A DNA stretch of 64,000 bases from Macrostomum lignano (taxonomy: Eukaryota): contig NIVC01001126.1 in assembly GCA_002269645.1 (NCBI GenBank), positions 248,001 through 312,000 on the forward strand, given 5' to 3'. Shown here one piece after another: positions 20,690-64,000 of this stretch (the stretch's first letter is position 1; the number at the start of each line of letters is the position of its first letter). The notes beneath the pieces are model-generated. The model saw nothing but the letters and a program-made list of their open reading frames with translations. It did not search any database and was not told where the DNA came from. The position numbers and the translations under genes are program-made.

Positions 20690-21250
20690 GCAGCTAGAGA
20701 GATACATAGAAAAACACAGAGAGTGGCTGAAATAAATCTATAAAGAAAGGAGAGAAGAGATATTATGAGAGTGAGGAGAGGGAGAAAGGAGGAAGAGGGG
20801 AGAAGAGAGGGTACAGTGAGAAAAGAGAGGGAGAGGAGAGAAGAGAGGGAAAGGAGAGGAGGAGAAAAGAGAAGGAGAGGGGAGAGAGTTGACGGGAGAA
20901 GAGATAGCGCAAGAAGAGAAGAGAGGGAGAAGAGATAGACAGAAAAGAGAGGGAGAAGAGATACACAGAGAAGAGAAGAGAGGGAGAAGAGATAGACAGA
21001 AAAGAGAGGGAGAAGAGATACACAGAGAAGAGAAGAGAGGGAGAAGAGATAGACAGAGAAGAGAAGAGAGGGAGAAGAGATAGACAGAGAAGAGAAGAGA
21101 GGGAAAGGAGAGGAGGAGAAAAGAGAGGGAGAAGAGATACACAGAGAAGAGAAGAGAGGGAGAAGAGATAGACAGAGAAGAGAAGAGAAGAGAGGGAGAA
21201 GAGATACACAGAGAAGAGAAGAGAAGAGATATACAGAGAAGAGACGCAGA
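20690..21250. repeat. Purine-rich (GA) low-complexity and tandem tract downstream of the MEK stop
   Basis: GAGAAGAGAAGAGAGGGAGAAGAGATAGACA-type units; source of the Leu/Ser/Phe-rich minus-strand ORFs. Confidence 0.92.
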
Positions 21251-21579
21251 AGAATAGATGGAATGCTTGAGACCAAGAGACTGTTGTGAAGTACACCAGA
21301 AACGCGAGTGTGAGAGAGAGATGGAGCAAAGCCATAGGCTATTGTAGCGAAACTGACACAGCAAAATGCGAAGCAAACAAAAGACACAGAGGACAAAAAA
21401 ACAACACTGAAAACACAGACTAGCAGAAGGGACACTTGGAAATGCGGGCACAATGACTGATATTACACTGTATTCTATAAACTGAGACCACAATTACACA
21501 CGCGAGAGTACGAGAATTATATTATAGTATAGTTATTATTATTATTATTATACCAGTTTGACAAGGTAATTTTTTTAGT

Positions 21580-42720: not shown

Positions 42721-43387
42721 ATATTTAGACATTCAGAACTATGGCCATCCATCTTAGTGAGTGAGACTGAGTGGCTATCTTGTCTTATACCCCTAGAGGC
42801 CTAGATTGCTAGATAGGCCTATACCCGATTATACCATTGAATTTGCCACACAAAAGCTATCAAGTAAATGGCAGGCTTTTTGTCAAATTAAGTGCACTAA
42901 AAAAGGCAGTCCAGTGAGCCAAAAAATAAAAATGAAAAATAGGCAAAACAAATGTTCTTTATTCTTTAAAACCATAGCCTATCTATAAGTAGGCCTATAT
43001 ATCCTCAAAAAAGTTTGAAATAAATATATAGGAAATTGTTCTGAAAACATGCATGGATATCCATCAGTAAACAAACCCACATGGCACACACATCATTTCA
43101 TTTCAGATTATGGACAGATAGAAAGAGACAGTATAGTTTGGAGCATGTGCATACACAAATTATAATCACTTTGGCAACAAGTCACTTTGGCGACAGTCAC
43201 TTCAGTGACAGTCACTTTGGCAACAAGTCACTTCCAGGGTGCCCGCACATTTTGAGAAAGTAAAATAAAGGAGGCTATTTGACTGATCCCAAAATAAAGG
43301 AGATTTAATTTGGTAACGTAACAATGACAGGCAATGTCTATCTAAGGCCTATATAGGCAAACTCTGGCCTTTTGCCTTTGCATCTCT

Positions 43388-43880
43388 ATGTCCTTTGGGT
43401 CCTTTAAAACTTCTATCTTTTTTCTGTCTCCTCTCTTCTCTCTCTTATTTTATCTCTTTTCTATTCTTCCCATTCTCCTGTACTCTTTACTCTTTTCTTT
43501 TCACTCTTATTTTGCTCATTTCTATTCTATTTTTCTACTCTTTCCTGTATCCTCTAGGCTCTCTTATCTTTCCTCTTATCTCTCCCTTCTTCTTTTCTCT
43601 TTCCTTTGCTATCCCCTCTATCTCTTCTCTTCTTTTAACTCTTCTTTATTATCTCTTTTCTTTAATCTCTCCTCTTTCATCTGTTTTTTGCTCTCTCATC
43701 TTTACTCACATCTTTCTCCTCTCTCCTCCTCTTCTCTTTTCTTTTATATCCTCTCTCTCTCATCTTATCTCTCCTCTTTTTTCTTGTCTCTCTTATTTGC
43801 CTCTTCCCCTCTTTTGTCCTTGCACTCCTCTTCCTCCTCTTTTTTCTCTCCTTACCCTCCTGTCTATTCTTATATTTTAT
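43388..43880. repeat. CT-rich low-complexity tract
   Basis: Direct reading. It is preceded by GGCAAACTCTGGCC, which resembles the left end of the Charlie-like MITE. Confidence 0.85.
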
Positions 43881-46800: not shown

Positions 46801-47998
46801 AGTAAAGAGAAAAAAGAAAAGAAAGATAAAAGAGCAGATGAGAGAGTATAGAGAAGAGATGAGATGAGAGGAGAGGAAAAAGTAGAGAGAGGAGAAAACA
46901 AATATCAGAGACTAGAATTAAGTAGTGCATGCTTTAGACAGATATTACTTGTCAATCTGTGGCAACCCCAATCAACAAAATCAATGGTTGCCTCAAATTT
47001 TTAAATATAACACAAATTTACTCCAATTTTTTTATTTAACTCTATTCTTACTATTAACAAGTTTTTTTAGTATAGCTTCACATTTTAATGCATGCAAAAA
47101 AGTTCTGGGGATTGGACTTTAGCAGGTTCAAAATCTGCAGGTTTTGGTAGCTTGTATAAAATAAAAATAAATGTTTTCAATGTTTACAACTCAAAGCTCA
47201 AAAAAGAGGATATGCCAAATTTAAATTTAATGTGTGCCAAAGTGGCACCTAGCCTTCTAATGATTTGTGCCATTTTGGAAAAATTTAGCAAGGGCACAAA
47301 TTTGGCACAAAACCCTAAATATAAGAGTGCAAAGATGAGAGATGAGAGATAAGATAATAGATAAGGGAGTATAGACCATGAGAGAAGATAAGAACAGAGA
47401 GGAGATAAAAAGATAAAAAATAAGTGAGTAAAGAGGAAAGAAAATAGGAGAGTCTCTGATGTAATATAGTATAGTATACTCGTATAGTAGTAAAATTTTG
47501 TAGAGGATAGTATTGCATGGTATAATTCAATTCATTATACCATACAAAATTTCATGCAAAAGATATAGCAAAGTTTTTTTCAAGTCTAAAACATAGTGAA
47601 GATAGAAAACAGTATTTTTTGAATAGCACACTTGGGGTAGAAATCTAGCACATTGTATACTTTAACCATACTTGAGCAGGCATGAGTTATCTGCATTTAA
47701 CTGCTCTGTTTATCAATTCAATGCACTGTGTCTGGGCCATATACCATAGAAAAATTGAATCGCATATGATTGGCAATTATCTTCATATGAATGCGCAAAT
47801 TCTTAAATGAAATTCTTAAATGAAAAATATAACCATGTTTTACTAAATAACTTATGTCTTTCTAACCATAACTGGCAAATATCTGAAACTTAAAGAAGTG
47901 TAATTCTCATTTGTTGGCCCATCAATCATAGAATCAAATTTGTAAACTTCGCCAGTAAAATCGAAAATTCACTTCAAAATTGGTTTTTCAAACTTCAG

Positions 47999-50900
47999 GA
48001 CGAACCAAGCGAAAAGCTAGGCCAAGATTTAGAGCAGCTGAAGCTGCTAGAAGAATGCCAGTTCGAATCAGAGGAGCCAGAGTCAATGCGCATATCGCCA
48101 TTGGCTAGTGTGGCGCTCTCTGCCAAACTGATGCCACTTTTCCAAGATCGGGTTGATGGCGAATTCTACGTGTTTGATGGCGACTCTTTACTGATGGAGG
48201 CTGCGTCCACAGTGGGGTGGCAATATGGCCAGCAGTTGCATTTGTTCTATCTGGCCGAATCCATTCTGAAACTGCTCAAAGATCACGGCGGTGACTGTCA
48301 AGTTGTTTACTTTAATAGTTTTCGCAATGATCCACTGATGGATCTGTTTAGGCGCGCTATGCAGTTACACCTTGCCGTCAACTGTTCAGTGCCTGTGCAC
48401 ACCGACTTGGCCAAGTCTTGCTTCGACCCAGCCTGGCTTCACTATTTGAAGGAGGAGAAGCCTCTGTTCTTTATGCTTCACGACGGTGTTGGCTATGGCG
48501 AATCTGCCGAACAGCGGCACGTGAATTTGGCTTTGTCTAGCCTGGCTCGCAGGGTGCCAGTTGCTTATGTTAGCAGTCTGCAGCAGAATGACATGAAGCT
48601 GCAAGCATCCTATGTACAGTGGATGCCACTGTATGGCAGACTATTTCAAAAGCTATCATGTACAGATCGATCGGCAATGGTCCCTGAAACTGATGATCAT
48701 GTTGAAGCTTTAAAGACTGAGGCCGAGTTAATTGGTATGTTTTTAAATCTCTTTATTAGTTGATTAAGTCATACATGCGCAACCCCCCTGATTTACACTG
48801 GCCATGCGACTAACTTTTTGACCAAAAATGCGACTTACCTGTGAAAGAAACCCTAAAGAAAAAATTAACGAAATGTTGGGTAAACGGCAAGAGTCACTAT
48901 GACTGTCTTACTAATGCTAAATGCCTCGTCATCTAATTAGTACTACGCCTGTATGTTTTTGGGTGGGTATTTTTACCAGGTCGGCCAGCAGTTGCGCATG
49001 TATGGATTAAGTGTTTATAAGCTTGTTTATTTGAACTGCTGAGCTAATAACTTTATGATTTTTGTTTCTGTTCAGAACCAGGCAGCCGCCTTAAAGACCA
49101 CCTCGCTGTTAGAGTTGCTCTCCGAGCTCTAGTTAAAGATACTAACATCGAAAGCAACGACGAAGTTATTGAAAAAGTGAGCCGCTGGTGCCTGTATTTT
49201 GCCTGCATGTCCACCATGACGCTGGACGACCGGCTTCAGCTTGTTGCTGCTACTAAAAGCGCCAATCAAGCCGCTGCTGCAGGCGACAAGATAGAGGAGC
49301 AAAATTTGCTCTCTTCTTTGCATGAATTGGCCAAGCACCTGCGGCTCGAACTGCTGCCAATGAAGGGTCTCAACGAGTTCGCCGATCCAGAGTCTGTCGC
49401 CGATCTTATCGACATTTTTGTCTATCGTCGATTTGGTCAAGCCTGGATTAACCAACTGCCCGGTTGGCATCCGCGAGCGCGTGAAATTTTGGCTAAGTAA
49501 GTTCAGGCTTCAGTTTTCCGTTTAATTATGCTACAGTTTTTTTGTAATTTTTTAGTACACCTGCCTAAATGAGCAGGTGTGCTTCCTGCTCAGCCGCAGC
49601 TATTGCGCGGCGCATCTGAAGGCTGCGTACGGCCGTTCAGTCCAAGGACTGGGGGGGGGGGTCGCCATACAGCCTCAATAACCCCAGCTAATGCTGGCAC
49701 CCATTTTACAGCTGGGTGAACTGAAGCAATGCAGAGTTAAGTGTCTTGCTCAATCAAGGACACAAATTGTTCCGAGTAAGTCGGACGATAGTGTACGGCC
49801 AATATTAAAACGGTTTCTTAGGCTTCCCGGCTGAGTTTTTAACTTTTGTGACCAGCACAGAGAGAGGAGGAGGTCACGGACACGGAGTATTAACTTGGTG
49901 GATTTTTTTATTTATCCACCAATCGCTGCATATTTCTACGACAGCTTTCGGCAAAACTATTTCAGCCTAGGGACTGACAGAACTGACCTCTGTAGCTAGC
50001 CACGCTATGTCAGCCTAGGACCAGCAAATTCAGCTATGGTCCAACCATACTCCGTAGACACGTGTCTCGAAAAAAAACCAGCTAACAAGTGGTGGTTGGT
50101 TGAGATTGGATGGCCCTATGCTGAGATAGCTAGGCAATGGGGGTTGTCTGGAAGCGAGAAGACATGGTAATGGCCATAGACACGAGCGGCGATAGCGGGG
50201 GTGTGGGAGTGAAGCCCCCACTTACAACCATAGACTATTTTATCTTACGCTCATAGACTGGTTCGTTTTCTAAAATGATATCCCGGTAAATTGCTTTATT
50301 GTCAATTTCAAACGAATGACCGGTCATTGCTTGAATGTCGTTGCCTTAACGTAAATTACCAGTACCATAGACATTTTGAACAATGGCTATGTTTTAACCG
50401 TGACTATAAAAATAACAGGACGGTAAATAGCTCGAGTCTGTAAATTCTGATTTTTAGTGATGCTACATTAATTAAAATTTTTTTTATAACGGCGTTCGCT
50501 TTCTTTCAGATACGAAAGCTACGCCTCTAAAATTTGTACCGAGCTGCAAAAGCTGAACAGTGCCGATCAATCGGATGCCTCGCCTCTATTGTCGCTGTCA
50601 ATCTCTGAGCAGGCGCTCCCACATGAGCCTGTCATTGAGCAGGCGGCTGAAATGGCGCCGCTTCAGCGTATCGACAATCGTCTGTTGAAAGAGTTTGCCG
50701 GCGAAATTCTTGACAAACTTGGCTCGTCTGGTTGCATATCGTTAACTAACGAGCCTGGACAGAACTCGTCGATGCTATTCGACGAGCGCTGTCATTGGCA
50801 CGTTAATCGGGAGCTTCGCGACGATTTAGAAGAGCAAGGCGAGCCTGAGCTGTCTTCTAATCCTATTCTAAGGCAGAGACAGCTGAAGAGTATTCAGAAG

Positions 50901-53900
50901 TACAAGAATTACATCAGCATGTACGGCGAGTCGCTGCATGGCGAGACTAGCGAGACTATCGTACTGTCAACCGGTTCTGACGGCGCGTCCGCTGCATCTG
51001 CCGGTGCTAACGAGAAGCCGAAATCTGCTAACCAGCAAAAGCAGAAGCATCAGAAGCAGCCAAAAGGCAAGTCAAAGCCAGTTTCTAAGGCTGATGCCAT
51101 CAAAGAAGAGAATTTGCGCGCCAAAGCCGACAAAGATACGAAGAAGCTAAAGGAGCAGTGGAAAAATCTGTTGCCGGGCGTTAAAAAATTGGAACCGGCT
51201 CAGGCTATCGCTGAGGCCACGCGTATGGCGGAGTCCTGCACAGTGCAGGATCGAATTTTCGAGGAGCCGGTACTTTTCGTAATGCGAGAGCAGTACAAGT
51301 TGTGGAAGACCAGCTGTGCTAGTAGTGGAGGCAGCGGTAAGTCTTTCAGCGCCTTGGCAGATCTAGTGCGGACCCTGCACAAGTACACAACCGAGCCGTT
51401 GGTTAGCATGATTAGTTCTGAATTGCGCGTCAAGATTGCCGAATTATTTATCATGGTTGGATTTAAAGAGGCTGCCGCTGTCTCTAGTGTAGACGCGGAG
51501 CGCTTAAAACATGTGCAAGTTGAAAAAGAATGCGTCTGTCCACTGAATTATCGCGACTTTCAAATGCAGCACATGGGCCACCTGATGCAGAGAAATGTTC
51601 GATTCGATCCAGATCCCAGGGTGAAGGGATTCATTCCCGACACCTGGCAGAGAGAACTGCTAGATGTGGTTGACAGGCGCGAGTCTGCCGTTATTGTTGC
51701 TCCAACATCGTCTGGAAAAACATTCTGCTCTTACTACTGCATGAAAAAGGTTCTGGAGATGAGCGACGAGGCTGTCGCTGTTTACGTAGCGCCAACCAAA
51801 GCTTTAGTGAATCAGGTTCAGGCTTCCATTAGTGCCAGGTTTTCTAAGCCAAACCTGACTCCCGGCATGGAGCTATGCGGAGTATTCACTCGAGACTATA
51901 ATCACAAAGCCACTAGCTGTCAGATTTTGGTGACAGTGCCGCAGTGCCTTGAACTGCTGTTGCTGAGTCCCAGGCGTCAAGGCTGGGCTAGCCGTATTCG
52001 CTATGTGATCTTTGACGAAGTTCACTGCATCGGCACCGGGATCGGGGGCGTTGTCTGGGAATATCTGCTCTGCCTAATCCGGTGTCCGTTTCTTGCCCTG
52101 TCGGCAACTATCTCTAACAAAGACTATTTTCACGACTGGCTGCAGACCATCAAGCAGTTTGTGCAGGTTCAAGACTCGACTCTTCTGAAGCAATCTCAGC
52201 CGATGCAGCCTAAGAAGCAACAGCGACAGAAAGGTGCCGCTCCTGCTGCTGTAGAAGGTTACAAAGTGAATCTGGTGACCTACTCTGAGCGCTATTCAGA
52301 CATTCGCACTTCCGTTTATCTGCCCAAGAGTGAATTTATTGCTGAAGTTAATCCGTGCGCTTTTCTTAGCGACAAACTATTGCGAATCAACGGATTCCCA
52401 AGGAATTTGAAGCTGTCACCGAAGGAATCTACCGAGGTTTGGTCAGCCGCTTTGCAGTGCTTCACGGACGATCCAGCTGCAGCTAAGGCTCTGCAGAAAT
52501 TTAAACCGCAATCGTTTTTTGGCACTGAGCCAATTACTAGGTAATAATTAATGACCAATCATTTTTTAATGTCTTTAGCCTACCAGTTAAAGCAGGGGTC
52601 AGCAAACCCCGGCCCGCCAAGCCTTTCTATCCGGCCCGCTCAAGGTTTGCGTCTCTTCTTAGCTTTCTTCTCCCTTCTCTTCTCCCTTCTCTTCTCCCTT
52701 CTCTCCCTTCTCTTCTCCCTTCTCTCCCTTCTCTTCCTTCTCCCTTCTCTCCCTTCTCCCTTCTCTCCCTTCTCCCTTCTCTCCCCTCTCCCTTCTCTCC
52801 CCTCTATCATCTCCCTTTTCTCTCCTCTCTCTCATCTCTCTTCTCTTTATTCTCTTCTCTCATTTCTCTCTCCCTTCTTTTCTCTCTACCCTCTCTTCTC
52901 TCCTCTTCCCTCTCTCCTCTCTGGTCTCCCTTCTTTCCCTTCTATCCTCTCTCCTGTCTACTCCTCTATTTCCTCTTCTATTTCTCTTCCTCTGCCTCAC
53001 AGTCATGCGCCGGATTCTTCATCTGGCCCTTGAGGTAAAAAGTTTGCCAACCCCTGAGTAAGACTCTGAAAAGACAAAAGCATACTTGAGCAACACGAGG
53101 CGATTGGATATTTTCCGTGACAATAGCCAAAATAGCTATTTAAACTCTCATTCTCTCAAATTAAATCTCAGAAGAAAAAAAGAACTAATATTTTTTTAGG
53201 TGCTTCCGATATTTTATAATGACCTCGTGTTGCACCTGTAAGGTTTTGGCCCTAAAATTGTGAAACACTTCCCACCCACCGCTTCAATTTAAAAAAACGC
53301 AGAACGCAATTTCGGGAACTGGAAGTCGGCCTGAAATCGACTGTGTCTGAGCTGCTTCGCCAGAGTCCACATGCCAAGTCTACCCAGCTGCTAACTACAA
53401 TTCAGTCAATTGAGGAGCAGCAGAATGTGACTCAACAGTTTGAGTTCCTATCCGACGTTGATCTTATTGAAAAATTTCCCGATCTAATCGATCGGCTGCG
53501 TTCCGAGGGTCGCTTGCCAGCTTTGGTGTTTATGAACGATCGTAAAGGCATTGAAAACCTTGCCGCGTCGCTTGTCGATCGAGCCAATGATCGGATTAAG
53601 CAAGCCGTTAATCCTAATCTGCTAGAGCGCATGGAGAAAGCTCGCGAAGCGATGGCCATCGCCGCCAAGCGCAATCGCGACAAAGAGGATTCGGACGATG
53701 AGAATCCAGCCGAGATCGAATTGGAGTCCTACTACAGAGATCGGCTGGAACTGCGCAGCAAAATTCAGGCCTGCGCTTATTTTAAACCGCAGGCTGTGCA
53801 AGAATCTTTTCTCAACAAAGTGCTGGAGAAGCTGCTTGATGAAGATGTGAAGCATATGCTGGAATTGGGCGTCTGCTATCATCATGCCGGTTGTTCTTCG

Positions 53901-56782
53901 AAGCACCGACAAGCTGTTGAGATGCTGTTCCGTAGCGGTCATTTGCAGGTTAGTTTGGGTTGTTTGCTTCTGTTGTTCAGCTTTGAGTAGCTGCTTTGTT
54001 CCCCTCACCCCACCGGCCCACCTTGTAAGCCGTTATGGAAATCAATCATTTTGCATCAGGTCGCTGAAATATAGTGCCTGCGGCGTTAAAGTGAGTGCCT
54101 GCGGCGTTAAAGTGAGTGCCTGCGGCGTTAAAGTGAGTGCCTGCGGCGTTAAAGTGAGTGCCTGCGGCGTTAAAGTGAGTGCCTGCGGCGTTAAAGTGAG
54201 TGCCTGCGGCGTTAAAGTGAGTGCCTGCGGCGTTAAAGTGAGTGCCTGCGGCGTTAAAGTGAGTGCCTGCGGCGTTAAAGTGAGTGCCTGCGGCGTTAAA
54301 GTGAGTGCCTGCGGCGTTAAAGTGAGTGCCTGCGGCGTTAAAGTGAGTGCCTGCGGCGTTAAAGTGAGTGCCTGCGGCGTTAAAGTGAGTGCTTGCGGAG
54401 CTAAAATGAGTGCACTGCGGCGCCAAAATGAGTGCCTGCGGCGCCAAAATGAGTGCCTGCGGCGCTAAAATGAGTGCTTGCGGAGCTAAAATGAGTGCAC
54501 TGCGGCGCCAAAATGAGTGCCTGCGGAGCTAAAATGAGTGCACTGCGGCGCCAAAATGAGTGCTTGCGGAGCTAAAATGAGTGCACTGCGGCGCCAAAAT
54601 GAGTGCCTGCGGCGCCAAAATGAGTGCCTGCGGCGCTAAAATGAGTGCCTGCGGCGATAATGTGAGTGCCTGCGGCGCTAAAATGAGTGCACTGCGGCGC
54701 CAAAATGAGTGCTTGCGGAGCTAAAATGAGTGCACTGCGGCGCCAAAATGAGTGCTTGCGGAGCTAAAATGAGTGCACTGCGGCGCCAAAATGAGTGCCT
54801 GCGGCGCCAAAATGAGTGCCTGCGGCGCTAAAATGAGTGCTTGCGGAGCTAAAATAAGTGCACTGCGGCGCCAAAATGAGTGCCTGCGGCGCCAAAATGA
54901 GTGCCTGCGGCGCTAAAATGAGTGCTTGCGGAGCTAAAATGAGTGCACTGCGGCGCCAAAATGAGTGCCTGCGGCGCCAAAATGAGTGCCTGCGGCGCCA
55001 AAATGAGTGCCTGCGGCGCTAAAATGAGTGCTTGCGGAGCTAAAATGAGTGCACTGCGGCGCCAAAATGAGTGCCTGCGGCGCCAAAACGAGTGCCTGCG
55101 GCGATAATGTGAGTGCCTGCGGCGCTAAAATGAGTGCCTGCGGCGCCAAAACGAGTGCCTGCGGCGATAATGTGAGTGCCTGCGGCGCTAAAATGAGTGC
55201 CTGCGGCGCTAAAGTGAGTGCCTGCGGCGCTAAAATGAGTGCCTGCGGAGCTAAAATGTGTGCCTGCGGAGCTAAAATGAGTGCCTGCGGCGCTAAAATG
55301 AGTGTATTTGGCGCCAAAATGAGCGCCTGCTTGCGGCGCCAAAACGAGTGCCTGTCTAGGGCGCCAAAACAAGTGCCTGTGACACTAAAACGAGTGCCTG
55401 TGATAGTAAAATGAGTGCCTGCGGTGCAAAAATGTGCGCCTGTGGCGCGAAAATGAGCGCTAACAATACCGATTCCCAAAATAATTTGCATGTAGGAATT
55501 TAGTCATGTACATGTAGAATTCTTGGCTTTATCCCCTCTTCCCACTATAAAATCCCATAGTGTTTTACTTTGGAATCTCTCTCGCGCCCCGTGCAGGTGG
55601 TCACAGCAACTGCCACCCTGGCTCTGGGCGTTCACATGCCCTGCAAAACTGTCGTATTCGCTGGCGATGACAAGTTTCTGGACGCGCTCAACTATCACCA
55701 GATGGCCGGTCGGTCCGGCCGGCGTGGCTTCGACAACATCGGCAACATTGTGTTCTACGGCGTGCCCGCCTCTAAGATTGCTCACCTGATCCAAGCCGAC
55801 CTGCCCGAACTCAAGGGCGGCTTTCCGCTCACCTGCGCTTTCGTTCTCAGACTGTTGCTTCTGACTGGGAATGCCACTGATCCGGAGGTGGCCCACGCTA
55901 AAGCTGCTACGGTTTTGGAGCACCCGTTTGCTGCGCACCAGAAGCCGGATATGATGCAGCAATTGCGATTGTTCTTCCTGTTCAGTGCGGAGTTTCTGCA
56001 CAGGCAGGATCTTATTAATGAGTTGGGCGCTCCTCTGGTGAGTCTCATTGAGTAACAATTTGGCACCGTGTGTTTTTCCCAAGCTGGATGCCATTTAGTC
56101 TAAGAGTCCTTTCACAGTCGTTGCAGGTAACACAGGTAAAATAGTGAAAGAAGTGACTCTCTAGACGACTATAAAACGACGAGAGTCAATTTGAGGCGTT
56201 TTATTGCCCGCGACTCTGAAACTAACAACTGTGTACATTTAGTCTACTTGTGTTAGTAGAAAGTTAAGCTTTAACAACGACTTTTTTTGCGACTCCTTGT
56301 TTTACGATTCTCTGCAACTCACGTGACTCGCTCTCGGCCATTCTTCAGGACCTGGCCGGCTTAGTATGCCACATGGGCTACCAGCAGCCTGGCAACTTCG
56401 TGCTCACCTATCTGCTTCGATCTCCCGCTCTGCGCCAGCTGTGCGAGCCGGCCAGCAAACAGCTGCCGTCAATTCACTACGGATTCTATTGCGAGGGCTG
56501 TCAGACTGGCGAACCGATAGTTGGTCAGCGATTCAAGTGCACCAAGTGCTGGTCTGACTACAGCCTGTGCTCCAACTGCTACTCCGGCCGGCCCAATCAC
56601 AGCCGGGGCCGGCAGCAGCACACGGCCGCCGATTTTGAGCGTCAATTGCCGCCGTTGCGAGTGCAATTCTCCGACGAGACGTTGAGAAAATTGGTTCGAA
56701 TCCTGTGCCACCTGTTCACTAAGATGGAGCTGGCCCGGTCTCTGGTTAAAAGGACGGCTGATGGAGCTCTGCATTATTTAAG
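47999..56782 (+). CDS. DDX60: DDX60-like Ski2-family DExD/H RNA helicase with an inserted ZZ zinc finger; 3' end not found in the window
   Basis: Exons 47999-48734 (first ATG 48086), 49076-49496, 50510-52540, 53303-53948, 55597-56037 and 56349-56782, all GT-AG and in phase. N-terminal DDX60 motifs: FDGDSLL, GQQLHLFYLAE. Also RFDPDPRVKGFIPDTWQRELLD, motif I APTSSGKT, DEVH, SAT, ATLALGVHMPCKTVVF, QMAGRSGRRGFD. Exon 6 ends at a GTAATA donor with no terminal exon before the transposon. Confidence 0.92.
48770..49004. mobile_element. MITE of the CATACATGCGCAAC-TIR family in DDX60 intron 1
   Basis: Perfect 14-bp TIRs; perfect TSD GATTAAGT at 48762-48769 and 49005-49012. Confidence 0.92.
49690..49770 (+). 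mobile_element. SINE/L2-type retroposon fragment (MIR/CORE-like block) in DDX60 intron 2
   Basis: GGCACCCATTTTACAGCTGGGTGAACTGAAGCAATGCAGAGTTAAGTGTCTTGCTCAA..AGGACACA resembles the conserved block shared by MIR/L2-related elements (recalled from memory). Confidence 0.5.
52593..53056. mobile_element. hAT (Charlie-like) MITE with an internal CT-rich tract in DDX60 intron 3
   Basis: TIR CAGGGGTCAGCAAAC / GTTTGCCAACCCCTG, with GGCCCG subterminal motifs. The interior (about 52660-53000) is CT-rich. Flanks AGTTAAAG and AGTAAGAC match only partly. Confidence 0.8.
54072..55440. repeat. 21-bp minisatellite (GAGTGCCTGCGGCGTTAAAGT / GAGTGCCTGCGGCGCTAAAAT)n in DDX60 intron 4
   Basis: About 65 copies; source of the periodic SACGVKV / AAGTHFN ORFs. 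Confidence 0.96.
56475..56636 (+). other. ZZ-type zinc finger domain within DDX60 exon 6
   Basis: HYGFYCEGCQTGEPIVGQRFKCTKCWSDYSLCSNCYSGRPNHSRGRQQHTAADF fits the ZZ consensus C-x2-C...PIxGxRxKC-x2-C..DY.LC-x2-C...H...H.F. Confidence 0.88.
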
Positions 56783-57730
56783 GTAATAAAATACCTGCCG
56801 TTTTTCCGCTAGAATCATTGATGCCGATTGGTAAACCTCTGACAAAATACGTTTATCTTTGCTGATATGCTTTTACCCTACTAGTAGTAGTTCATGCTTG
56901 GAAAATGTTTGCGACGGGGATAGACAAAGAGTTTCTCTACAAATATAGAGCAGTTAAGACGCAGAGTGTACATTCCTCAGGGGTATAGTTTTGTCTCGCA
57001 TAGAAACGCCTAACCGCAGTACCCCTGTGACACTTGTCTCTGCCTGGCTGAAAGCTTGTACTGAGTTAGTAGGCTGGGTTGGAGGGTACCCGCCAAACTT
57101 AATTCGTCCGATTTTTTGCTTTTAGCACCGGTATCTTGATCCGGTTTATTGTCCGGAATCGGCCCATATCCACAGTGTAAAGAAACCGGAACAGAGCCGG
57201 ACAAAAAGTTACGTTTCAGGACCAGGCGTTCAGATTTTATCGCCTTTGCCCTGTTTTATGTCCGGTGATTATTCCGAAGTTTGTTCCGGTGCCTGATCCG
57301 GTCAAAGAGAGCCGGATGTTGCGCCGGTTTTGTTCCGGTGCCTGATCCGGTCAAAGAGAGCCGGATGTTGCGCCGGTTGCTGGACCGTGGCATTGACCGA
57401 TCCAAATGGGATCGAGACCGGACCGAAAGCCGGACCGGCCCGGTTTAATCTTGAACCGTTCTCTCCGGAGCAGGAGGCAGTCTTCCACGCGAATAGAAAA
57501 TGAAAAGAAAATTGAAGAGTTTAAACTGAAGTACTTTTTTTTCAATCCAGGCATTTGTCAACCTTTCCATTTCCATGGCAATTTATTTTTACTTCCGAAA
57601 CATCGAAAGCACCGAACATCGCAAATCACACATGGTCCCTTACAAATGCGTCGCTTCCCTTCTGGCGCTCACAAATGAGTCATAAAGGTGATAAAGGTGA
57701 TAAAGGACGTTCAATTGGCCGAACCAACCG

Positions 57731-59644
57731 TCAAACCGCAAGCTTCAGCAAGTCAACGAGGCTACCGGCCGACTGCAAATCGTCCATGCTCGTGACGAGG
57801 TTAGCCGTCGTCACTGAAGCCGCCAACGTATCCGTAGCCGCAGTCGTAGTCGCAGGCGAAGGGTAAATGAGAACCGGATGGTTCTCATCAGGCTCCTCCA
57901 TGACGACAACGATGGCATGGGAGTCTGTCGTCGAGGAGGCCTTCTTCGGCCTCTTGGTAGCGCTTGGCCTCGGGCCGCTCGATCCGGGCCTCGGGCCGGT
58001 GATACGGCGGCACTTCAGTTTCGGCAGACCCTGGCGAACGCGTGCCGTCTCGCGGCAACGCGAGAAAGCGCGTTGTAGTTGGCGCTTAGTGGCGATGACG
58101 CCAACGTTCTGCAGCCACTGCTTAGCGATAAGCAGTTTGGCTGGGTTAGCGGCAGCAGTCAGCCGGTCCCCCAGCTTTCGGCCCGAGAAATTTGCGCCTG
58201 AAAACTCCGTCTCAGAGAACAGTGCCCGCAAGAGACACCGCAACAGCGACGAATGTTCCGAACGCAGTATTGCGGCGTAGTCCGGACGCTCTTCGTCGAT
58301 GTCCACATGTGGCTGGCCAGCCTTTTCTTTGGCCTGCAAATATGTACGGAGATGAGCTTCCAGTATAGAACGGCTCCCGACCTTGACAAATATATTCGGT
58401 TGGCGGTCCGACAGTGCGACGCGCCCACCGCTATTACTAGCACCGGCCGAGTTTTCAGCGCTGCAGGCAGTCATTATCGCGTGGGTGTCGCTGGCAGACA
58501 AGGCAGCGTCAGCGACGAAGCGTTTGGCCGAGAAATCACTATCGTCCGCGCTATCACAGCTCATGCGTGTTTCGTCGTCGCTGTGACCAGCGACGTGTGT
58601 GCTAGTATCAGCATTGGTGGACAAATTGTCCGGGTCGGCAACAAGCATAGTGGACGCCCTGATCAGGAATGCGTTGCATGATTGCGCCCTGTTTTGCATC
58701 TGCCGAATGACGTTGTCCTTGCGACGAATCTCACGCTCAAGGCTGCTCTCGCGCAGCGCCAAATAGGAGGTTCGCTCCTTCGCGTCGTCCAGACGCCGGC
58801 GCAGCTCCACTTCGGCAGCCGACTTGTCTCGTATCTCGCCTCCTGTCAGTGGAGACAAAAGTTAATGTTACTCCGATCAATCATACATTCCCCAGAACAT
58901 TCAACACTTACTTAGTGTCTCCACTAAGATGTCCGCCTTGCGACTTTCCAGTAGCAGGCTTCGACAGGACGCGCAGCCTCGAGGTGGCTCTCTGGTCGGG
59001 GCGTGCACATTCGTGAGGCGACAAGAAGCCGTCGCTTCTTCACGACTTTCGAAGGGCCCACGGATGAGAGTGCCGATCCACCGACGGGCAGTTTTCCTAT
59101 TACTTTTGGCCACTTTAATGGCAACAACACTCCCAACAGAAACTGGGATGGGTCCGTCGCTGCGGCGCTGCACAATATTCTCCGTAGTGGAGACAACGTC
59201 CGTGCGTTCCCGGGATTCGTCATAGCGCATGATGAAGAAGCGCTCGGTAGGCTCTTGCTTGTACGGGAGCATATCGGATCCTTCTTTCGACGGGTTGCCA
59301 CCGTCCCGGTTGACTCGCCTGCCACGTGTGTCTCGATCGCCAGAATCAGTAGCTGAGCACCCCGCCTCATGGGCGAAGCAATCGTCTGCGTCTGCACCAT
59401 TGGGCGTCGGATTTGCGGTTGGCGGCTTAGGTATGGTCGTCTGGACAGCATCGATCACGGGTGTTAGCGTGTCACTGCCAGCTGGTAGATTACCATTCGC
59501 AGCTGGCTGATCGTCCTTCGGCTTCGCCTTCGCCTTCTTCAGAGATCTTGGAGCTTTAGACTTCGAAGCAGTACTAGCCGCAGCGGCGGGAGCTGCGGGA
59601 GCGGCAGCTTTTTTTCCGCTTGCGAAGCAGGTCGCCTTGCCCAT
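57731..59644 (-). CDS. Transposon accessory protein with coiled coil and BEN domain, 2 exons, about 614 aa
   Basis: Exon 58912-59644, then a 69-nt GTAAGT..CAG phase-1 intron (58843-58911), then exon 57731-58842. Coiled coil ELRRRLDDAKERTSYLALRESSLEREIRRKDNVIRQMQ. BEN-like segment SSLLRCLLRALFSETEFSGANFSGRK..ANPAKLLIAKQWL..LQRAFSRCRETAR. Confidence 0.75.
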
Positions 59645-60355
59645 TTAAAGACTGTAAGACATGGAGCAGGTTTTGAAATTAGGTAATTCCACGTAGAGAT
59701 GACAAAACTCACGAGTAAGAAAAGTGTGTTCGCCTGCTTCTACGAAGAGACATGCAAGATGTACAGTATGTGCCTAGGCGTGTAGAAACTCGAAACTAGA
59801 ACGAAAAAGGGAACTAGATTATGCAACATCTATAGTATGCAAGAAACTATACTACAGTTAATAGAGTATGCAAGTTAAAGAACTTTCGAAAGAAGACAGC
59901 TGACAGATACCCAGCGCTACGCGTGGAGCTGCAGCTCAACAAAAGCAAATCGTTGTTTTTATTGGCATTTCGTCTGTAGCTCCCAGCTCTTCTCCAGATC
60001 CAGACTCCATCATGCAGTCAAAAAGGTGGTAACGAAGAATAACATTAAAAACATACCTCCCCTGTTTACTCCCATGCAGAATTACATGGATGCTGCCACA
60101 AGAAAATTAAGTAGGTATATGTGCACATGTGTAGTTCGCTTAAGAATCAAACAACAACAATCAAACAATAGAGCAAGTTTTTTCTATTGCGCAAATCGAA
60201 ATTACCGTGTCAATGCCTACACTGAGTAACATACTAACGTCCCTCACTAACTAACTCACTCACTAACCTGGAGTCAGTCACGCCTTCGAGAGGATCAAAA
60301 AGTCGGGATCTAAAAAAGTGTGGCTTTTAGTATGCTGCCCAGTATATCAGTCCAA

Positions 60356-61339
60356 TCAATTCTTTCCGTGGGCCTTCTTCTCCTGCTGGAGCTCACGCAG
60401 ATCCCTTAGTGGCCGTCTGCGGCGGCGTAGCGGTCGCATTGCCGCCACAGGTGCTTCCGGCGGAGTCTCGGGCATGTCAATCGCCCAGAACTGACGTGGA
60501 TCCGCAATGGGTTTCGGTTGGTTCGACCGGTGTTTGCCGGCCTGCTGCAGTCGTCTTTGGCGGCTTTCTGGAGACAGGTTAGAATACCACGACTCGCAGT
60601 CCGGACAGCAGTGCGCCTGCAATTCTAGCCTGTCGGCTTTGCGCCTGCATGGGAAGACGCACGCCGGTCTCGAAGTCCTCTCCGGCAACAGGTTGTAATC
60701 AGCGCGGATTTGAGAAGACGACATGCCGGCATACAGGCCTGCAAAGAGACTGACCCGGCGGCTGGGTTCCGGTGCCGGCTCTGCGGCGGGTGGTACGTGG
60801 TACATGTCAGGGCCCTGCGTCTCAAAACCCTCCTCGTCGTCGTAGTTGAACCTGTCGACTGCCTCGGGTTCCGGTGCCGGCTCTGCGGCGGGTGGTACGT
60901 GGTACATGTCAGGGCCCTGCGTCTCAGAACCCTCCTCGTCGTCGTAGTTGAACCTGTCGACTGCCTCGGGTTCCGGTGCCGGCTCTGCGGCGGGTGGTAC
61001 GTGGTACATGTCAGGGCCCTGCGTCTCAGAACCCTCCTCGTCGTCGTAGTTGAACCTGTCGACTGCCTCATCGGCGGGTTCCTCATTCGATGCCGCCACG
61101 GGTTTCGCTAGCACAAGTGGAGTCGAATCGAAAGGCCACATCGACTGCAACACTTGCGTACTAGGAATGTCATCTAATGCGACGATGGCCCTATGCGCCC
61201 GCACCATGGACCCCGTGTTAAAAACTGGCGACGTGGGACGTGAACGGCCGAGTCGAAGGAGCTCAGAACGGAGCAAACGGTTCTCCTCTGTGAGGGCGCG
61301 GCAGATGGGACAGCTGGCTGCGTGTGACCAGTGGTCCAT
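60356..61339 (-). CDS. RBBP8: Intronless CtIP/Sae2/Ctp1-like protein (327 aa) inside the CACTA element
   Basis: The C-terminal block RRKADRLELQAHCCPDCESWYSNLSPESRQRRLQQAGKHR...DPRQFWAIDMPETP aligns almost without gaps to recalled human CtIP [40 protein letters not shown]...TPENFWEVGFPSTQ. There is an N-terminal CxxC plus short coiled coil (CPICRALTEENRLLRSELLRL) and a basic C-tail. This is a homologue; orthology to the host gene is not established. Confidence 0.85.
   Translation of the reverse strand: MDHWSHAASCPICRALTEENRLLRSELLRLGRSRPTSPVFNTGSMVRAHRAIVALDDIPSTQVLQSMWPFDSTPLVLAKPVAASNEEPADEAVDRFNYDDEEGSETQGPDMYHVPPAAEPAPEPEAVDRFNYDDEEGSETQGPDMYHVPPAAEPAPEPEAVDRFNYDDEEGFETQGPDMYHVPPAAEPAPEPSRRVSLFAGLYAGMSSSQIRADYNLLPERTSRPACVFPCRRKADRLELQAHCCPDCESWYSNLSPESRQRRLQQAGKHRSNQPKPIADPRQFWAIDMPETPPEAPVAAMRPLRRRRRPLRDLRELQQEKKAHGKN
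60765..61070 (-). repeat. Three in-frame 102-bp (34-aa) tandem repeats inside the CtIP-like ORF
   Basis: CGTAGTTGAACC at 60841, 60943 and 61045. Peptide EAVDRFNYDDEEG(S/F)ETQGPDMYHVPPAAEPAPEP. Confidence 0.95.
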
Positions 61340-61940
61340 CGCTGTAAAATTGGGGTAATCGTTATGGCGCTGAAGCGCGTTACCGTTCGAAATTCACAGC
61401 TATTCAACATACTGTGTATACAGCATACTATACTGTACTACAACTAATAGAGGTGCTGGAACTAGTCGTACAGTAACTATAACGATACAAATACAGATCA
61501 CAGCAGAAACTGTCGCTGAGTTTGATTTCGACGTGAACGAGTATGTCCGATGACATCCTAGATGCTATAGTCATTGTACAAACGGAAGCAGAAGACAACA
61601 GAAAGTCAATGTGTTTTAACTCCTTTAGTTTTCGTCTCGTTTATTTCAATACCTACCTTAATTATATACCTTAGTGTTACATAGAACGGAAGAATTGAAA
61701 CTATAACTTTCATTTTTTAGGCGAAGAAACACATCATCACATTGTCTTAACTTCGAGCAATGAAGACATAACAAACGCTTGTACTGCTGTTCTCGTTGAG
61801 ACAGTCTGACTGGAGCAAAATAGGTGTACATTTTTGGGTGGGCGTGACAGGAATTGGATATGTATTGTTTAGCCTCGGACCACTTAGTCATCTTAGCCAG
61901 TAGTTAGCGACAAAACAAAGCACCGAAGCATCCGAGTGGA

Positions 61941-64000
61941 TCAATGATATGACAACTGTGGGTGAGGCAACAGTGCGATGTGGCTCTCGGAAAGGACACA
62001 CGAACCGATGACATCCTCAAGCGGTAGTAGTAGCGGATCTCCGTAGTCCGCCAAATCGCCGAATGGATCGGCTGCAAGCCGCCGCACGTGAGCGCAACGG
62101 CAGCCACGCCTAGCGGAATTGCCACGTACAGCACATAGTGCCTCTAACGGGTCCTGATCTGGTTCGCGGACCGGTAGAATTAGGACCCGAAGTGACACTT
62201 GTGCACCGGTACTACTAATGGCTTCAACTCGTGCAAAACGAAATGTCGTCGGACGAAACCCGGAAATTGCAACGAAACACGATGCTACAGTGCGGCGCAG
62301 TGGGCGGTTATCGTTTTGTCGGCTGATGAAAACTACAATGACCAGCCCTGAGGGCAGTGTCGCACTGCGCCACCCATCCAGCATGCCATGCGGTCGTCGA
62401 AGAACTATGGAGTTACGGAGAACGATTTCCGTGCGCCGATGGCTCCGTTGTCGCCTCTCCAAGCCCTCAGCACCTAGCAGACGCGCTCCAATCTGGTTGG
62501 CGGCTATCTGTCTCTCCACTGACGTAACCACGTCAGCCTCGTTGTTGCTCGAGCCATGAAGGAGCTGTTGTAATCGTTTGTGCATGGTTTCGAACAACCC
62601 AGTTGATTGATGATGTATCGGCCCACCGGAGTCTACAGCGCTCAGCATGTGGCAGCAAACTTGATGGGCGTTGTACGTAAGCGCCCGAGTGGAATATAAG
62701 CGCGGTAAATTTGCGAGGAAGCATCTGAGGGACACCTCGACGTGGTCCAGTTCGTCCTTTGGCCCACCTTCAAGTCCCATCCAAAACACAGCCGTTGATA
62801 GAACTAGTAAATGGTTGTAGTGGTCCGGCGGCAGAAAATCACCCAGAACGAGCGGAGCGAACACTAAAATCCACATTTCTAGTTCGTGTCCACGAAGATG
62901 GCGCAGGTCCTTCAGCTTCCTAACACTGTGGCGTTGCACTGATCGTGGCACGAGAATGCGATTGAGACGCTCGCCGACATCGCCAAGTCTGGGGTGCAGG
63001 TCCGGACAGTTAGTGTCTGCACGGTCTGGCTTCTCATTGCGGATTGCGAACATCTGTAGCAATATCCGACGAACGAGCCCGCCGCACAACTGGTGCAAAT
63101 AACAGGGCGGACAACCTTTTATAAAATCAAAGCCAGGCAGCCTGCTTAGAGGAGAGTGTCCGTACACACCGAGTACGTCGCGGCAAGTACCACCGCCGTT
63201 GCTCACATGTAGATCGGCAAGGTGCGAAGTGTCAGCAGCATTACGCACTGTTGTCTGTGTACAGCCTAGCATAGCAGGAGCGTTCAACATGGCGGGTGTA
63301 GCTTCGACGTGAAAAAGTCGCCCGCCGCCTTGCAAGTAACCGGTCCGCAGATAGCATTTGTCGCAGTATTTTCCGGAAAAGCGACGCATGCATAGAGCGT
63401 CCGCCCTCGCCGGGGCGTCCATCATCCCAAGGAGGGGATGGAGGCGCAGGACGCAAGTCTCGCCGTTGGCGTTGTTGTACGTTACACCTATGGTACGCAG
63501 GCTGGACAAGACGTTTACCATAACAGGCAGAAATGCGGCGGCCTTGACTTTTTGCTTGCCAGCCCACACTCCTGCGATGAAAACGTATCGCAGTTTAACT
63601 CGGTCGTGTACCTCTACGATGGAAATGTAGAATGGGCACACTTCGACGCAGCTAGTACTGAACCGAGGAAAACCATCGAAGCAGAAAACGTACGACAGAT
63701 CGGCTCGGCGCTGTACATCGATGACCTCCAGAAAGTCTCGGTACAACGAGCTGTTGTACACGTGCAAAACGTCCGGCTGCACGTCGCGGTCAGCAGGCCA
63801 AACGACGTTGTCAAGAAGTCCACCGCTCTCGATAGACTGTCGGATCTGCTGACGCACGTCGAATGCGTAAAAGTTGGCCACAGATTCTTCGCCGCAGTGT
63901 GCACAGACGTCACCATCGGAAACGTGCCGAAAACGAGTGCGACGCATGCAGCTATTGCAAACGGCGTTGCAAACCGTCGAACCAATCGCTGACTGCGCTG
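61941..64000 (-). CDS. CACTA/EnSpm DDE transposase (TnpD/Tnp2-like), open through the window edge
   Basis: The frame has no stop from about 63998 down to the stop codon at 61941-61943. It has an N-terminal Cys cluster, CFDGF (D at about 63676), GVWAGKQK, MMDAPARA (D at about 63418), FSGKYCDKC, GVYGHSPLSRLPGFDFIKG, CYLH (C/D-x2-H motif), RGHELEMW, TYNAHQ and GPIHHQSTGLFE (E at about 62590). Confidence 0.9.
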   Translation of the reverse strand, partial: AQSAIGSTVCNAVCNSCMRRTRFRHVSDGDVCAHCGEESVANFYAFDVRQQIRQSIESGGLLDNVVWPADRDVQPDVLHVYNSSLYRDFLEVIDVQRRADLSYVFCFDGFPRFSTSCVEVCPFYISIVEVHDRVKLRYVFIAGVWAGKQKVKAAAFLPVMVNVLSSLRTIGVTYNNANGETCVLRLHPLLGMMDAPARADALCMRRFSGKYCDKCYLRTGYLQGGGRLFHVEATPAMLNAPAMLGCTQTTVRNAADTSHLADLHVSNGGGTCRDVLGVYGHSPLSRLPGFDFIKGCPPCYLHQLCGGLVRRILLQMFAIRNEKPDRADTNCPDLHPRLGDVGERLNRILVPRSVQRHSVRKLKDLRHLRGHELEMWILVFAPLVLGDFLPPDHYNHLLVLSTAVFWMGLEGGPKDELDHVEVSLRCFLANLPRLYSTRALTYNAHQVCCHMLSAVDSGGPIHHQSTGLFETMHKRLQQLLHGSSNNEADVVTSVERQIAANQIGARLLGAEGLERRQRSHRRTEIVLRNSIVLRRPHGMLDGWRSATLPSGLVIVVFISRQNDNRPLRRTVASCFVAISGFRPTTFRFARVEAISSTGAQVSLRVLILPVREPDQDPLEALCAVRGNSARRGCRCAHVRRLAADPFGDLADYGDPLLLPLEDVIGSCVLSESHIALLPHPQLSYH

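What the first reader, a model, noticed from the sequence alone, without database searches (positions are those of the whole stretch)
56349..56782. DDX60 helicase with a ZZ zinc finger inserted in its C-terminal domain
Seen in sequence: a complete ZZ finger lies within one exon, between LRQLCEPASKQ and FSDETLRKLVRILCHLF. These two segments are contiguous in recalled human DDX60 (LCQPTRKGSKHFSQDVMEKLVLVLAHLF). Established: ZZ domains read N-terminal residues (N-degrons in p62/SQSTM1, the histone H3 tail in others), and DDX60 is a Ski2-like helicase linked to antiviral RNA sensing and decay. Inference: an unusual fusion coupling RNA surveillance to N-terminus recognition. The acidic binding residues are only partly kept (CEGC, SDYSLC).
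Basis: partly seen in the sequence, partly recalled or inferred. Interest (0 to 1): 0.72.

Follow-up and report, generated by a model that had tools for sequence, protein, structure and literature searches.

The report
ZZ zinc finger inside flatworm DDX60
A DDX60-type RNA helicase gene, apparently from a Macrostomum flatworm, really does carry a ZZ zinc finger spliced into a loop of its helicase body; this is a rare, old and undescribed variant, but the finger lacks the residues that would let it read protein N-termini.

Summary
Window 56349-56782 (+) is one exon with canonical splice sites. About 69 of its residues (nt 56460-56666) form a ZZ finger: Pfam PF00569 scores 30.8 bits against a cut-off of 21.4, and the closest solved domain is HERC2 ZZ at E 2e-7. 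The finger lies in frame between two DDX60-homologous helices. Upstream exons encode the DDX60 PIN-like domain and an intact helicase core.

Among 128 family representatives spanning the site, from vertebrates to fungi and protists, only three proteins (two clusters) besides the window have the insert. They are Macrostomum lignano A0A1I8FWF1 (91% identical here) and one unidentified marine eukaryote (37% over the full-length alignment), known from Tara metagenome contigs and a spliced contig assembled from run ERR6349624. Insert length and all eight zinc ligands are identical, and the two lineages are sisters in a tree built without the ZZ. That points to one old, selected insertion.

The N-terminus-reader idea is weak. 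The two aspartates that clamp the alpha-amino group in HERC2 and PRT1 are E/S here, V/S in M. lignano and T/C in the marine protein. I favour a partner-docking module (inference).

Caveat: no exon for the remaining DDX60 C-terminal region occurs in the 7.2 kb downstream.

The parts
56349..56782 (+). Exon 6 of the DDX60-like gene (the finding). It has 144 codons plus 2 nt and starts in phase 0. It encodes helix - ZZ insert - helix.
   Evidence: Searches give the splice signals and the open frame. In one search, M. lignano P0011 residues 1302-1446 align to 56349-56783 at 86% identity.
56460..56666 (+). The inserted segment relative to ordinary DDX60: exon-6 residues 38-106, about 69 aa, QLPSIHY...PPLRVQ.
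   Evidence: spacing of 106 aa against 28-54 aa in 124 other family members; 59/69 residues identical to M. lignano, the same level as the flanks.
56472..56588 (+). Pfam ZZ match (residues 42-80). The zinc-ligand codons are C48 56490, C51 56499, C64 56538, C67 56547, C74 56568, C77 56577, H84 56598 and H91 56619, so the last two lie just beyond the Pfam match.
56493..56564 (+). Positions equivalent to the alpha-amine clamp of N-terminus-reading ZZ domains: E49 (56493-56495), D70 (56556-56558) and S72 (56562-56564).
   Evidence: One search gives the alignments to HERC2 6ww3 and PRT1 8zg8. PMC9001736 and PMC12370974 identify the clamp residues.
56038..56348 (+). Intron 5 (311 nt), from GTGAGT to TTCAG.
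55597..56037 (+). Exon 5: the end of RecA2 (motif VI GRSGRRG at 55708-55728) and the winged-helix region.
   Evidence: 96% identity to P0011 residues 1153-1301; splice context and motif; pLDDT 84-96.
53303..53948 (+). Exon 4: linker and the start of RecA2 (YHHAG at 53877-53891).
50510..52540 (+). Exon 3: the RecA1 helicase core. Walker A APTSSGKT is at 51699-51722, DEVH at 52011-52025 and SAT at 52098-52112.
   Evidence: (DEAD 82.8 bits, ResIII 52.2 bits).
49051..49497 (+). Open coding block, exon 2; the limits are approximate. Its only support is a short weak match to marine homologue P0012 (24 residues, 46% identity, E 0.004). The M. lignano model lacks it.
47999..48734 (+). Exon 1 block; the 5' limit is uncertain. 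It encodes the PIN-like_DDX60 domain. The donor GTATGT is at 48735.
   Evidence: (PF23002, 97.9 bits).
56783..64000 (.). Downstream 7.2 kb with no detectable DDX60 C-terminal exon. Reading through the donor gives ...HYLR then a stop at 56784-56786. Minus-strand ORFs of 375, 247, 327 and 668 aa lie here.
   Evidence: (tblastn and a family C-terminal HMM against all six frames).

Best explanation
The window holds most of a DDX60-family Ski2-like RNA helicase gene. It is most probably from a Macrostomum flatworm, either M. lignano or a congener or homeologue.

A 69-residue ZZ-type zinc finger (C4 + C2H2, two zinc sites) has been inserted into a surface loop between two helices that follow the winged-helix domain. 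The insertion is real coding sequence, and it happened once in an ancestor shared with an unidentified marine eukaryote. Its length and all metal ligands have been kept since. Those steps are shown.

The likely mechanism is inferred. The finger is a rigid, protruding docking knob that recruits a protein partner or a short peptide motif to the helicase. This resembles how lineage-specific inserts in related helicases (the Mtr4/Ski2 arch, the k-DDX60 A-site insert) make partner or ribosome contacts. It probably does not read free N-termini in the canonical way, because the acidic alpha-amine clamp is not conserved in this clade.

Confidence differs by part. The descriptive part is about 0.9. The docking-module mechanism is about 0.4.
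For: - ZZ identity: Pfam score above the gathering cut-off. PDB ZZ domains are hit at E 2e-7. The divergent marine copy independently hits dystrobrevin, KCMF1 and p62 ZZ domains.
- DDX60 identity: PIN-like_DDX60, DEAD/ResIII, motifs I, II, III and VI. Named relatives are DDX60 from amphioxus, coral, hemichordate, insects and vertebrates. The flanks fold like MTR4, Ski2, Hel308 and Brr2.
- Insert in a loop: the flanking helices have block-mean pLDDT 74-92 on either side of a low-confidence 65-70 residue excursion.
- Rarity: only P0011 and P0012/P0159 have a ZZ pattern among 164 retrieved proteins, and only they have the long spacing among 128 that span the site.
- Single origin: insert length of 106 is identical in both lineages. 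P0011 and P0012 are sisters in 100/100 NJ bootstraps on 1329 columns that exclude the ZZ.
- Expression and splicing: the M. lignano model joins exons 5 and 6 as proposed. Logan contig L004 lacks the 5' intron that genomic L001/L002 retain (CAG|G acceptor) and still carries the ZZ.
- Clamp loss: with PMC9001736 and PMC12370974.
- Precedent for insert-mediated contacts in a DDX60-like helicase: PMC7773551.
Against: - No binding data of any kind exist.
- The structure models of the ZZ are low confidence: pLDDT 49-65 in the context of the flanks and 49 alone. The fold search with the ZZ model was not significant.
- The window's own copy keeps two acidic residues (E49, D70), so a modified N-terminus pocket is not excluded.
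- The residues conserved among the three ZZ sequences are mainly structural (ligands, R-[FY]-K-C, L-C, C-Y). No conserved ligand surface is evident, which would also fit a purely structural insert.
- The rest of the C-terminal domain is not in the window. This copy could therefore be truncated.
- The species of the marine homologue is unknown, and the NJ sister grouping could be helped by long branches.
Confidence: 0.55

Rival explanations
1. The ZZ is a true N-terminus reader (N-degron, histone H3 tail or SUMO1 N-terminus). It would link DDX60 RNA or ribosome surveillance to recognition of protein N-termini.
For: The closest solved ZZ domains are all N-terminus readers: HERC2, PRT1, p62 and KCMF1. 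The window copy keeps H-x-G-x-x-C before the first CxxC and has acidic residues at two of three pocket positions, E49 and D70.
Against: The equivalent of HERC2 D2730 / PRT1 D336 is Ser in the window and M. lignano, and Cys in the marine homologue. The equivalent of D2709 / D312 is E, V and T respectively. D2709A or D2730A alone abolishes HERC2 binding (PMC9001736). A function that were the reason for keeping the insert should be conserved across the clade.
Confidence: 0.17
2. The insert is a structurally tolerated zinc knuckle with no ligand of its own. It would be a neutral or stabilising decoration of the helicase, or a weak RNA-contacting element.
For: Conservation among the three sequences is concentrated on metal ligands and core residues. 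The surface positions that bind ligand in other ZZ domains vary.
Against: Exact retention of length and all eight ligands between proteins only 37% identical over their full-length alignment suggests purifying selection on more than tolerance. ZZ domains studied so far are protein or peptide binders (PMC9001736, PMC12370974).
Confidence: 0.15
3. The copy in this window is a 3'-truncated or decaying paralogue, so the ZZ exon here is not part of a working full-length helicase, even though intact ZZ-DDX60 genes exist elsewhere.
For: No exon for the last 70-280 residues was found in 56783-64000 by tblastn or by a family HMM. That stretch carries minus-strand ORFs, one with a SAE2/CtIP C-terminal match. 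Unspliced read-through stops after two codons. M. lignano is a hidden polyploid with many duplicated genes (PMC5704211, PMC10468722).
Against: All six coding blocks are open. Five of the junction sites checked have canonical GT/AG signals, all catalytic motifs are intact, and identity to the M. lignano protein is 72-96%. The exon ends at a good donor in the same phase as the M. lignano model, which continues with R-PTENSK. The window simply ends 7.2 kb later.
Confidence: 0.18
4. Artefact: a chance Cys/His pattern, a mis-assembly, or an unspliced intron mistaken for coding sequence.
For: None found. The only weakness is the low pLDDT of the ZZ models.
Against: The same insert is seen in four independent sources: the window, UniProt M. 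lignano, two Tara metagenome assemblies, and one spliced contig from a public run. The Pfam and PDB matches are significant. There is no in-frame GT..AG pair.
Confidence: 0.01

Closest known systems
DDX60 / DDX60L (vertebrate interferon-induced Ski2-like helicases) and their invertebrate, fungal and protist orthologues
   Same: N-terminal PIN-like_DDX60 domain, DExH core with APTSSGKT / DEVH / SAT / GRSGRRG, and a winged-helix region followed by helical segments. Identity is 40-53% over exon 5 and the start of exon 6.
   Different: These proteins have 28-54 residues where this protein has 106. No ZZ pattern occurs anywhere in them. The function of the flatworm protein is untested. The mammalian roles (RIG-I help, exosome link, type II IRES restriction, PMC9724679) cannot be transferred.
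Macrostomum lignano A0A1I8FWF1 (UniProt, 'Helicase ATP-binding domain-containing protein')
   Same: The same gene family member with the same ZZ insert. Identity is 91% over exons 5-6, and the exon junctions are the same.
   Different: Identity is only 72-88% in the N-terminal exons. Its model lacks the window's 49051-49497 block. E49 is Val. It extends 67 residues beyond exon 6.
HERC2 ZZ domain (PDB 6ww3/6ww4)
   Same: Best sequence match: E 2e-7, and 24/47 positions identical in the printed alignment. Same C4 + C2H2 cross-brace order and the RFKC strand.
   Different: HERC2 has the acidic pocket D2709/D2728/D2730, where this protein has E/D/S. The His-His spacing is x3 in HERC2 and x6 here. 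HERC2 ZZ sits in a HECT E3 ligase, not in a helicase.
PRT1, p62/SQSTM1 and KCMF1 ZZ domains (N-degron readers)
   Same: Significant sequence matches. PRT1 also shares the ...R-x-QQHT segment after the third CxxC.
   Different: Their two conserved Asp residues that bind the alpha-NH3+ (PRT1 D312/D336) are not conserved in the DDX60-ZZ clade (PMC12370974).
Arch/KOW insertion of Mtr4 and Ski2; A-site insert of kinetoplastid k-DDX60
   Same: These are lineage-specific modules inserted into a Ski2-like helicase body, and they serve as platforms for partners or the ribosome (PMC7773551). The flanks of the present insert fold like MTR4 and Ski2.
   Different: The fold is different (a zinc finger rather than a stalk with a beta-barrel or a helix). 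The insertion point was not shown to be equivalent. This is a functional analogy only.
CPEB/ORB2 C-terminal ZZ domain
   Same: A ZZ-type finger within an RNA-handling protein, reported to bind translational co-repressors rather than N-termini (abstract of PMC12774597).
   Different: It is a C-terminal appendage of an RRM protein, not an internal insert. No specific sequence relationship was found here.

Membership tests
DDX60 family (Ski2-like SF2 helicases) | N-terminal PIN-like_DDX60 domain (PF23002) | tested here: met
   window 47894-48760, E 7.5e-28, 97.9 bits against a cut-off of 27.
DDX60 family (Ski2-like SF2 helicases) | DExH helicase core with motifs I, II, III and VI intact | tested here: met
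   DEAD 82.8 bits and ResIII 52.2 bits. APTSSGKT, FDEVH, LSATI and GRSGRRG. Helicase_C alone scores below its cut-off on the split exon (18.5 against 23.5).
DDX60 family (Ski2-like SF2 helicases) | Closest named relatives are DDX60 and the post-RecA2 region has the Ski2-like fold | tested here: met
   Searches give the named DDX60 orthologues. Searches give MTR4, Ski2, Hel308 and Brr2 as the best structural matches (E 7.5e-5, though TM-scores are low for this partial query).
DDX60 family (Ski2-like SF2 helicases) | Conserved C-terminal region after the xHLF helix (about 200-300 residues, ending with the ...YALDF[FY]KHG... segment) | tested here: inconclusive
   It was not found in 56783-64000. 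It is present in marine homologue P0012 and partly in M. lignano P0011. The window may end before these exons.
ZZ-type zinc finger (PF00569) | Profile match above the curated threshold | tested here: met
   30.8 bits against 21.4. M. lignano scores 22.6 bits. The marine copy is below the Pfam threshold but hits PDB ZZ domains.
ZZ-type zinc finger (PF00569) | Eight metal ligands in the order CxxC...CxxC...CxxC...H...H (C4 and C2H2 sites) | tested here: met
   C48, C51, C64, C67, C74, C77, H84 and H91 are invariant in all four sequences. The H-x6-H spacing is longer than in HERC2.
ZZ-type zinc finger (PF00569) | ZZ fold (three strands and a helix around two zinc ions) | tested here: inconclusive
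   The AF2 models have low confidence. Foldseek gave no significant match, with BIG and ZZZ3 ZZ domains appearing only at E about 0.5-2. Zinc binding is not testable here.
N-terminus-reading ZZ domains (p62, HERC2, PRT1, p300, ZZZ3 type) | Two conserved Asp residues that clamp the ligand's alpha-NH3+ (HERC2 D2709/D2730; PRT1 D312/D336) | tested here: not met
   The window has E49/S72, M. lignano V/S and the marine homologue T/C. Residue roles come from PMC9001736 and PMC12370974.
N-terminus-reading ZZ domains (p62, HERC2, PRT1, p300, ZZZ3 type) | Binding that requires a free N-terminus | not testable with these tools
   This needs a peptide-binding assay.

The most novel reading that the evidence does not exclude
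The DDX60-ZZ clade has re-tooled the ZZ pocket into a new kind of reader. The retained acidic position (D/D/E) plus lineage-specific residues would recognise a terminus or short motif on a viral or ribosome-associated protein. One polypeptide would then sense both an aberrant RNA or ribosome and a protein mark, giving an invertebrate antiviral or translation-quality-control sensor with no vertebrate counterpart.
Probability: 0.1. Interest if true: 0.7.

Novelty: new variant of a known kind. Interest (0 to 1): 0.4.

Why it matters
DDX60 is widespread in eukaryotes but mechanistically obscure: its partners, its substrates and even its role in innate immunity are disputed. A natural variant with a dedicated interaction finger planted on the helicase body would give a handle for finding what the family docks to.

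Macrostomum lignano is a tractable animal for this, since it has transgenesis and is used as an experimental model (PMC7053086). The variant also adds a case of a ZZ domain outside ubiquitin, chromatin and dystrophin contexts, and one that has lost the N-terminal clamp. That bears on how general the 'ZZ = N-terminus reader' rule is.

The scope is narrow: two lineages, with no functional data.

Tried and rejected
1. Word-indexed protein searches. One search returned only 10 distant hits. One search returned three short ZZ-less fragments. One search returned no candidates. None returned the M. lignano or marine proteins, although these are in the collection. Only the exhaustive representative search found them.
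2. Search for the missing C-terminal exons in the window. I used tblastn with ten homologues at E up to 50, then P0011/P0012, then a 58-sequence C-terminal HMM against all six frames. Nothing was found.
3. Look-up of window ORFs to identify the source assembly and read past position 64000. They are not on record.
4. Metagenome scan with the ZZ-region alignment. It returned one locus, which lacks a ZZ.
5. Structure prediction of the ZZ. In the context of the flanks the pLDDT was 49-65, and alone the mean was 49. Foldseek with the ZZ model found nothing significant. I therefore make no fold-level claim.
6. Cryptic intron that would remove the ZZ. No in-frame GT..AG pair exists. Rejected.
7. Identity of the marine organism. 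The accessions are absent from the paper library, and there are no other genes on the contigs. It remains unknown.
8. Equivalence of the insertion point with the Mtr4/Ski2 arch. I considered this but could not show it. The secondary-structure order suggests the ZZ lies later, after the winged-helix wing, so I claim only an analogy.
9. Terminal inverted repeats around the downstream minus-strand ORFs and an Rfam scan of the window. Neither was informative.
Full report
**1. The observation**

Window 56349-56782 (+) is a clean internal exon. It is preceded by ...ttcttcag and followed by gtaataa. It is open in frame 1 only.

Its 144 codons read DLAGLVCHMGYQQPGNFVLTYLLRSPALRQLCEPASK / QLPSIHYGFYCEGCQTGEPIVGQRFKCTKCWSDYSLCSNCYSGRPNHSRGRQQHTAADFERQLPPLRVQ / FSDETLRKLVRILCHLFTKMELARSLVKRTADGALHYL.

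The middle part matches Pfam ZZ (PF00569) at E 2.5e-7 and 30.8 bits, above the curated 21.4. It also matches solved ZZ domains of HERC2 (2e-7), PRT1, MIB1, p62 and KCMF1. The eight ligands follow the classical C4 + C2H2 order and lie at nt 56490-56621.

**2. The gene around it**

On the same strand, upstream open blocks encode:
- a PIN-like_DDX60 domain (97.9 bits);
- a DEAD/ResIII core with APTSSGKT, FDEVH and LSATI;
- YHHAG and motif VI GRSGRRG.

The junctions have canonical signals, and the reading phases fit the M. lignano protein:
- exon 3 ends at 52540 (AG|GTAATA);
- exon 4 is 53303-53948;
- exon 5 is 55597-56037 (CTG|GTGAGT);
- exon 6 starts at 56349.

An AlphaFold model of exons 5+6 is confident for the flanks (block-mean pLDDT 74-96). 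Its best structural matches are MTR4, Ski2, Hel308, Pol-theta helicase and Brr2, which are Ski2-like helicases. TM-scores are low because the query is only part of the protein.

In that model the ZZ is a 65-70 residue excursion between helix 175-180 and helix 258-272. This is about 35 residues after the beta-wing of the winged-helix region.

**3. How unusual it is**

An exhaustive HMMER search of 1.84 billion cluster representatives found 2142 relatives. Of the best 150, every alignment stops at query position about 175-190, which is the insertion point. There are two exceptions:
- P0011, 91% identical, aligned over 1-293;
- P0012, 44% identical, aligned over 1-277 without a gap.

A ZZ ligand pattern occurs in only P0011, P0012 and its cluster mate P0159 among 164 retrieved proteins. 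In a MAFFT alignment of the 128 sequences that span the site, the PxN-to-xHLF distance is 28-54 residues (mode 37) in 124 of them. It is exactly 106 in the window, P0011, P0012 and P0159.

The ZZ-less set includes annotated DDX60 from mole, gecko, frog, skates, chimaera, amphioxus, a hemichordate, a coral, orthopteran and phasmid insects, fungi, Hemimastix and Thecamonas.

Full-text searches for DDX60 with 'ZZ-type' or 'ZZ domain' found only incidental co-mentions.

**4. Who else has it**

P0011 is UniRef100_A0A1I8FWF1 of Macrostomum lignano. Pfam finds ZZ in it as well. The window is 72-96% identical to it exon by exon. The window is therefore a congener, or a diverged homeologue of this hidden polyploid (PMC5704211, PMC10468722).

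P0012 is encoded on two Tara and ENA marine metagenome contigs, L001 and L002. P0159 is on a Logan contig from run ERR6349624, L004.

L004 differs from the genomic contigs upstream of a CAG|G acceptor. It is therefore a spliced transcript, and it carries the ZZ in frame.

P0011 and P0012 are each other's best match. They are sisters in 100 of 100 neighbour-joining bootstraps on 1329 columns that exclude the insert. With the identical insert length, this argues for one insertion event that predates their divergence. They are 37% identical over their full-length alignment. The organism behind P0012 is unknown.

**5. What the finger probably does**

N-terminus-reading ZZ domains hold the ligand's alpha-NH3+ with two Asp residues:
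- HERC2 uses D2709 and D2730, with D2728 alongside. D2709A or D2730A abolishes binding to H3 and Arg peptides (PMC9001736).
- PRT1 uses D312 and D336 (PMC12370974).

In the HMMER alignments and in the clade alignment, the equivalents of the three HERC2 pocket positions are:

| Sequence | D2709 / D312 | D2728 | D2730 / D336 |
|---|---|---|---|
| Window | E | D | S |
| M. lignano | V | D | S |
| Marine protein | T | E | C |

The clamp is thus absent in two of three lineages and half-present in the window. What is conserved is the metal scaffold and core: the ligands, R-[FY]-K-C, L-C and C-Y.

I therefore rank canonical N-degron or H3 reading low (about 0.17). I favour a partner-docking knob, by analogy with other lineage-specific inserts of Ski2-like and DDX60-like helicases. 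k-DDX60, for example, contacts the 43S complex largely through its extra insertions (PMC7773551). This mechanism is inference, and nothing here measures binding.

**6. Caveats**

- The rest of the DDX60 C-terminal region is not detectable in the 7.2 kb after the exon. This region is about 70 residues in the M. lignano model and about 210 in the marine protein.
- That downstream stretch holds minus-strand ORFs, one with a SAE2/CtIP C-terminal match.
- Unspliced read-through would stop after ...HYLR.
- The gene may continue beyond the window across a long intron, or this copy may be truncated. I could not retrieve the source assembly.
- The ZZ structure models are too uncertain to use.

**7. Verdict**

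The feature is real, rare, conserved and lineage-restricted. It is a new variant of a known helicase family, present but undescribed in a public protein record. Interest is moderate. The striking functional reading (N-terminus recognition) is the least supported part.

Noticed in passing
window 54073-55457: A 21-bp minisatellite (AGTGCCTGCGGCGCTAAAATG, about 65 copies, 88% matches) fills most of intron 4 of the DDX60-like gene. It creates long spurious ORFs on both strands.
   Followed up: partly
window 52667-52976 (also 43317-44024 and 20674-21493): CT-rich low-complexity tracts (TCTCC-type units). The first lies in intron 3 of the gene.
   Followed up: no
window 60356-61339 (-): A 327-aa ORF with a match to the SAE2/CtIP C-terminus (22.4 bits against a 19.8 cut-off). 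It contains three perfect 102-bp tandem repeats (60764-61069). It lies downstream of, and antisense to, the DDX60-like gene.
   Followed up: partly
window 57731-58858, 58901-59644 and 61941-63947 (all -): Three further long minus-strand ORFs (375, 247 and 668 aa) with no Pfam match. The region is GC-richer (0.50-0.55) than the rest of the window. It is unclear whether they are host genes or a mobile element sitting in a DDX60 intron.
   Followed up: partly
window 49051-49497 (+): An open block with a short, weak match to the marine homologue (P0012 residues 313-336, 46% identity, E 0.004). It is absent from the M. lignano UniProt model A0A1I8FWF1, so that public gene model may be missing an exon.
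   Followed up: partly
L003 (metagenome contig ERZ1740069 NODE-3037), about 1120-1500: A ZZ-less DDX60-like gene of an unknown eukaryote has what looks like an intron in the loop where the ZZ is inserted (...HHLCERTSG / ...KITEEVMREIVLVLSHLF). I inferred this from a change of reading frame between the two segments and did not check the splice sites. It hints that the finger could have entered by exon shuffling into a former intron. In the window, both flanks and the ZZ are now one exon.
   Followed up: no
window 16935-17558 (-): A single-exon ORF for signal recognition particle receptor beta subunit (PF09439, 126.7 bits).
   Followed up: partly
window 31021-31635 (-): An ORF ending in the start of a protein kinase domain (weak Pfam hit at 19.8 bits, below the cut-off). 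It is probably the first coding exon of a kinase gene.
   Followed up: no
window 27256-28151 and 17638-18171: Tandem-repeat arrays that give long repetitive ORFs on both strands. They are probably satellites, not genes.
   Followed up: no
L001/L002 versus L004: The marine ZZ-DDX60 gene is a single 5.0-kb coding exon apart from one 5' intron. This is unlike the multi-exon gene in the window.
   Followed up: partly
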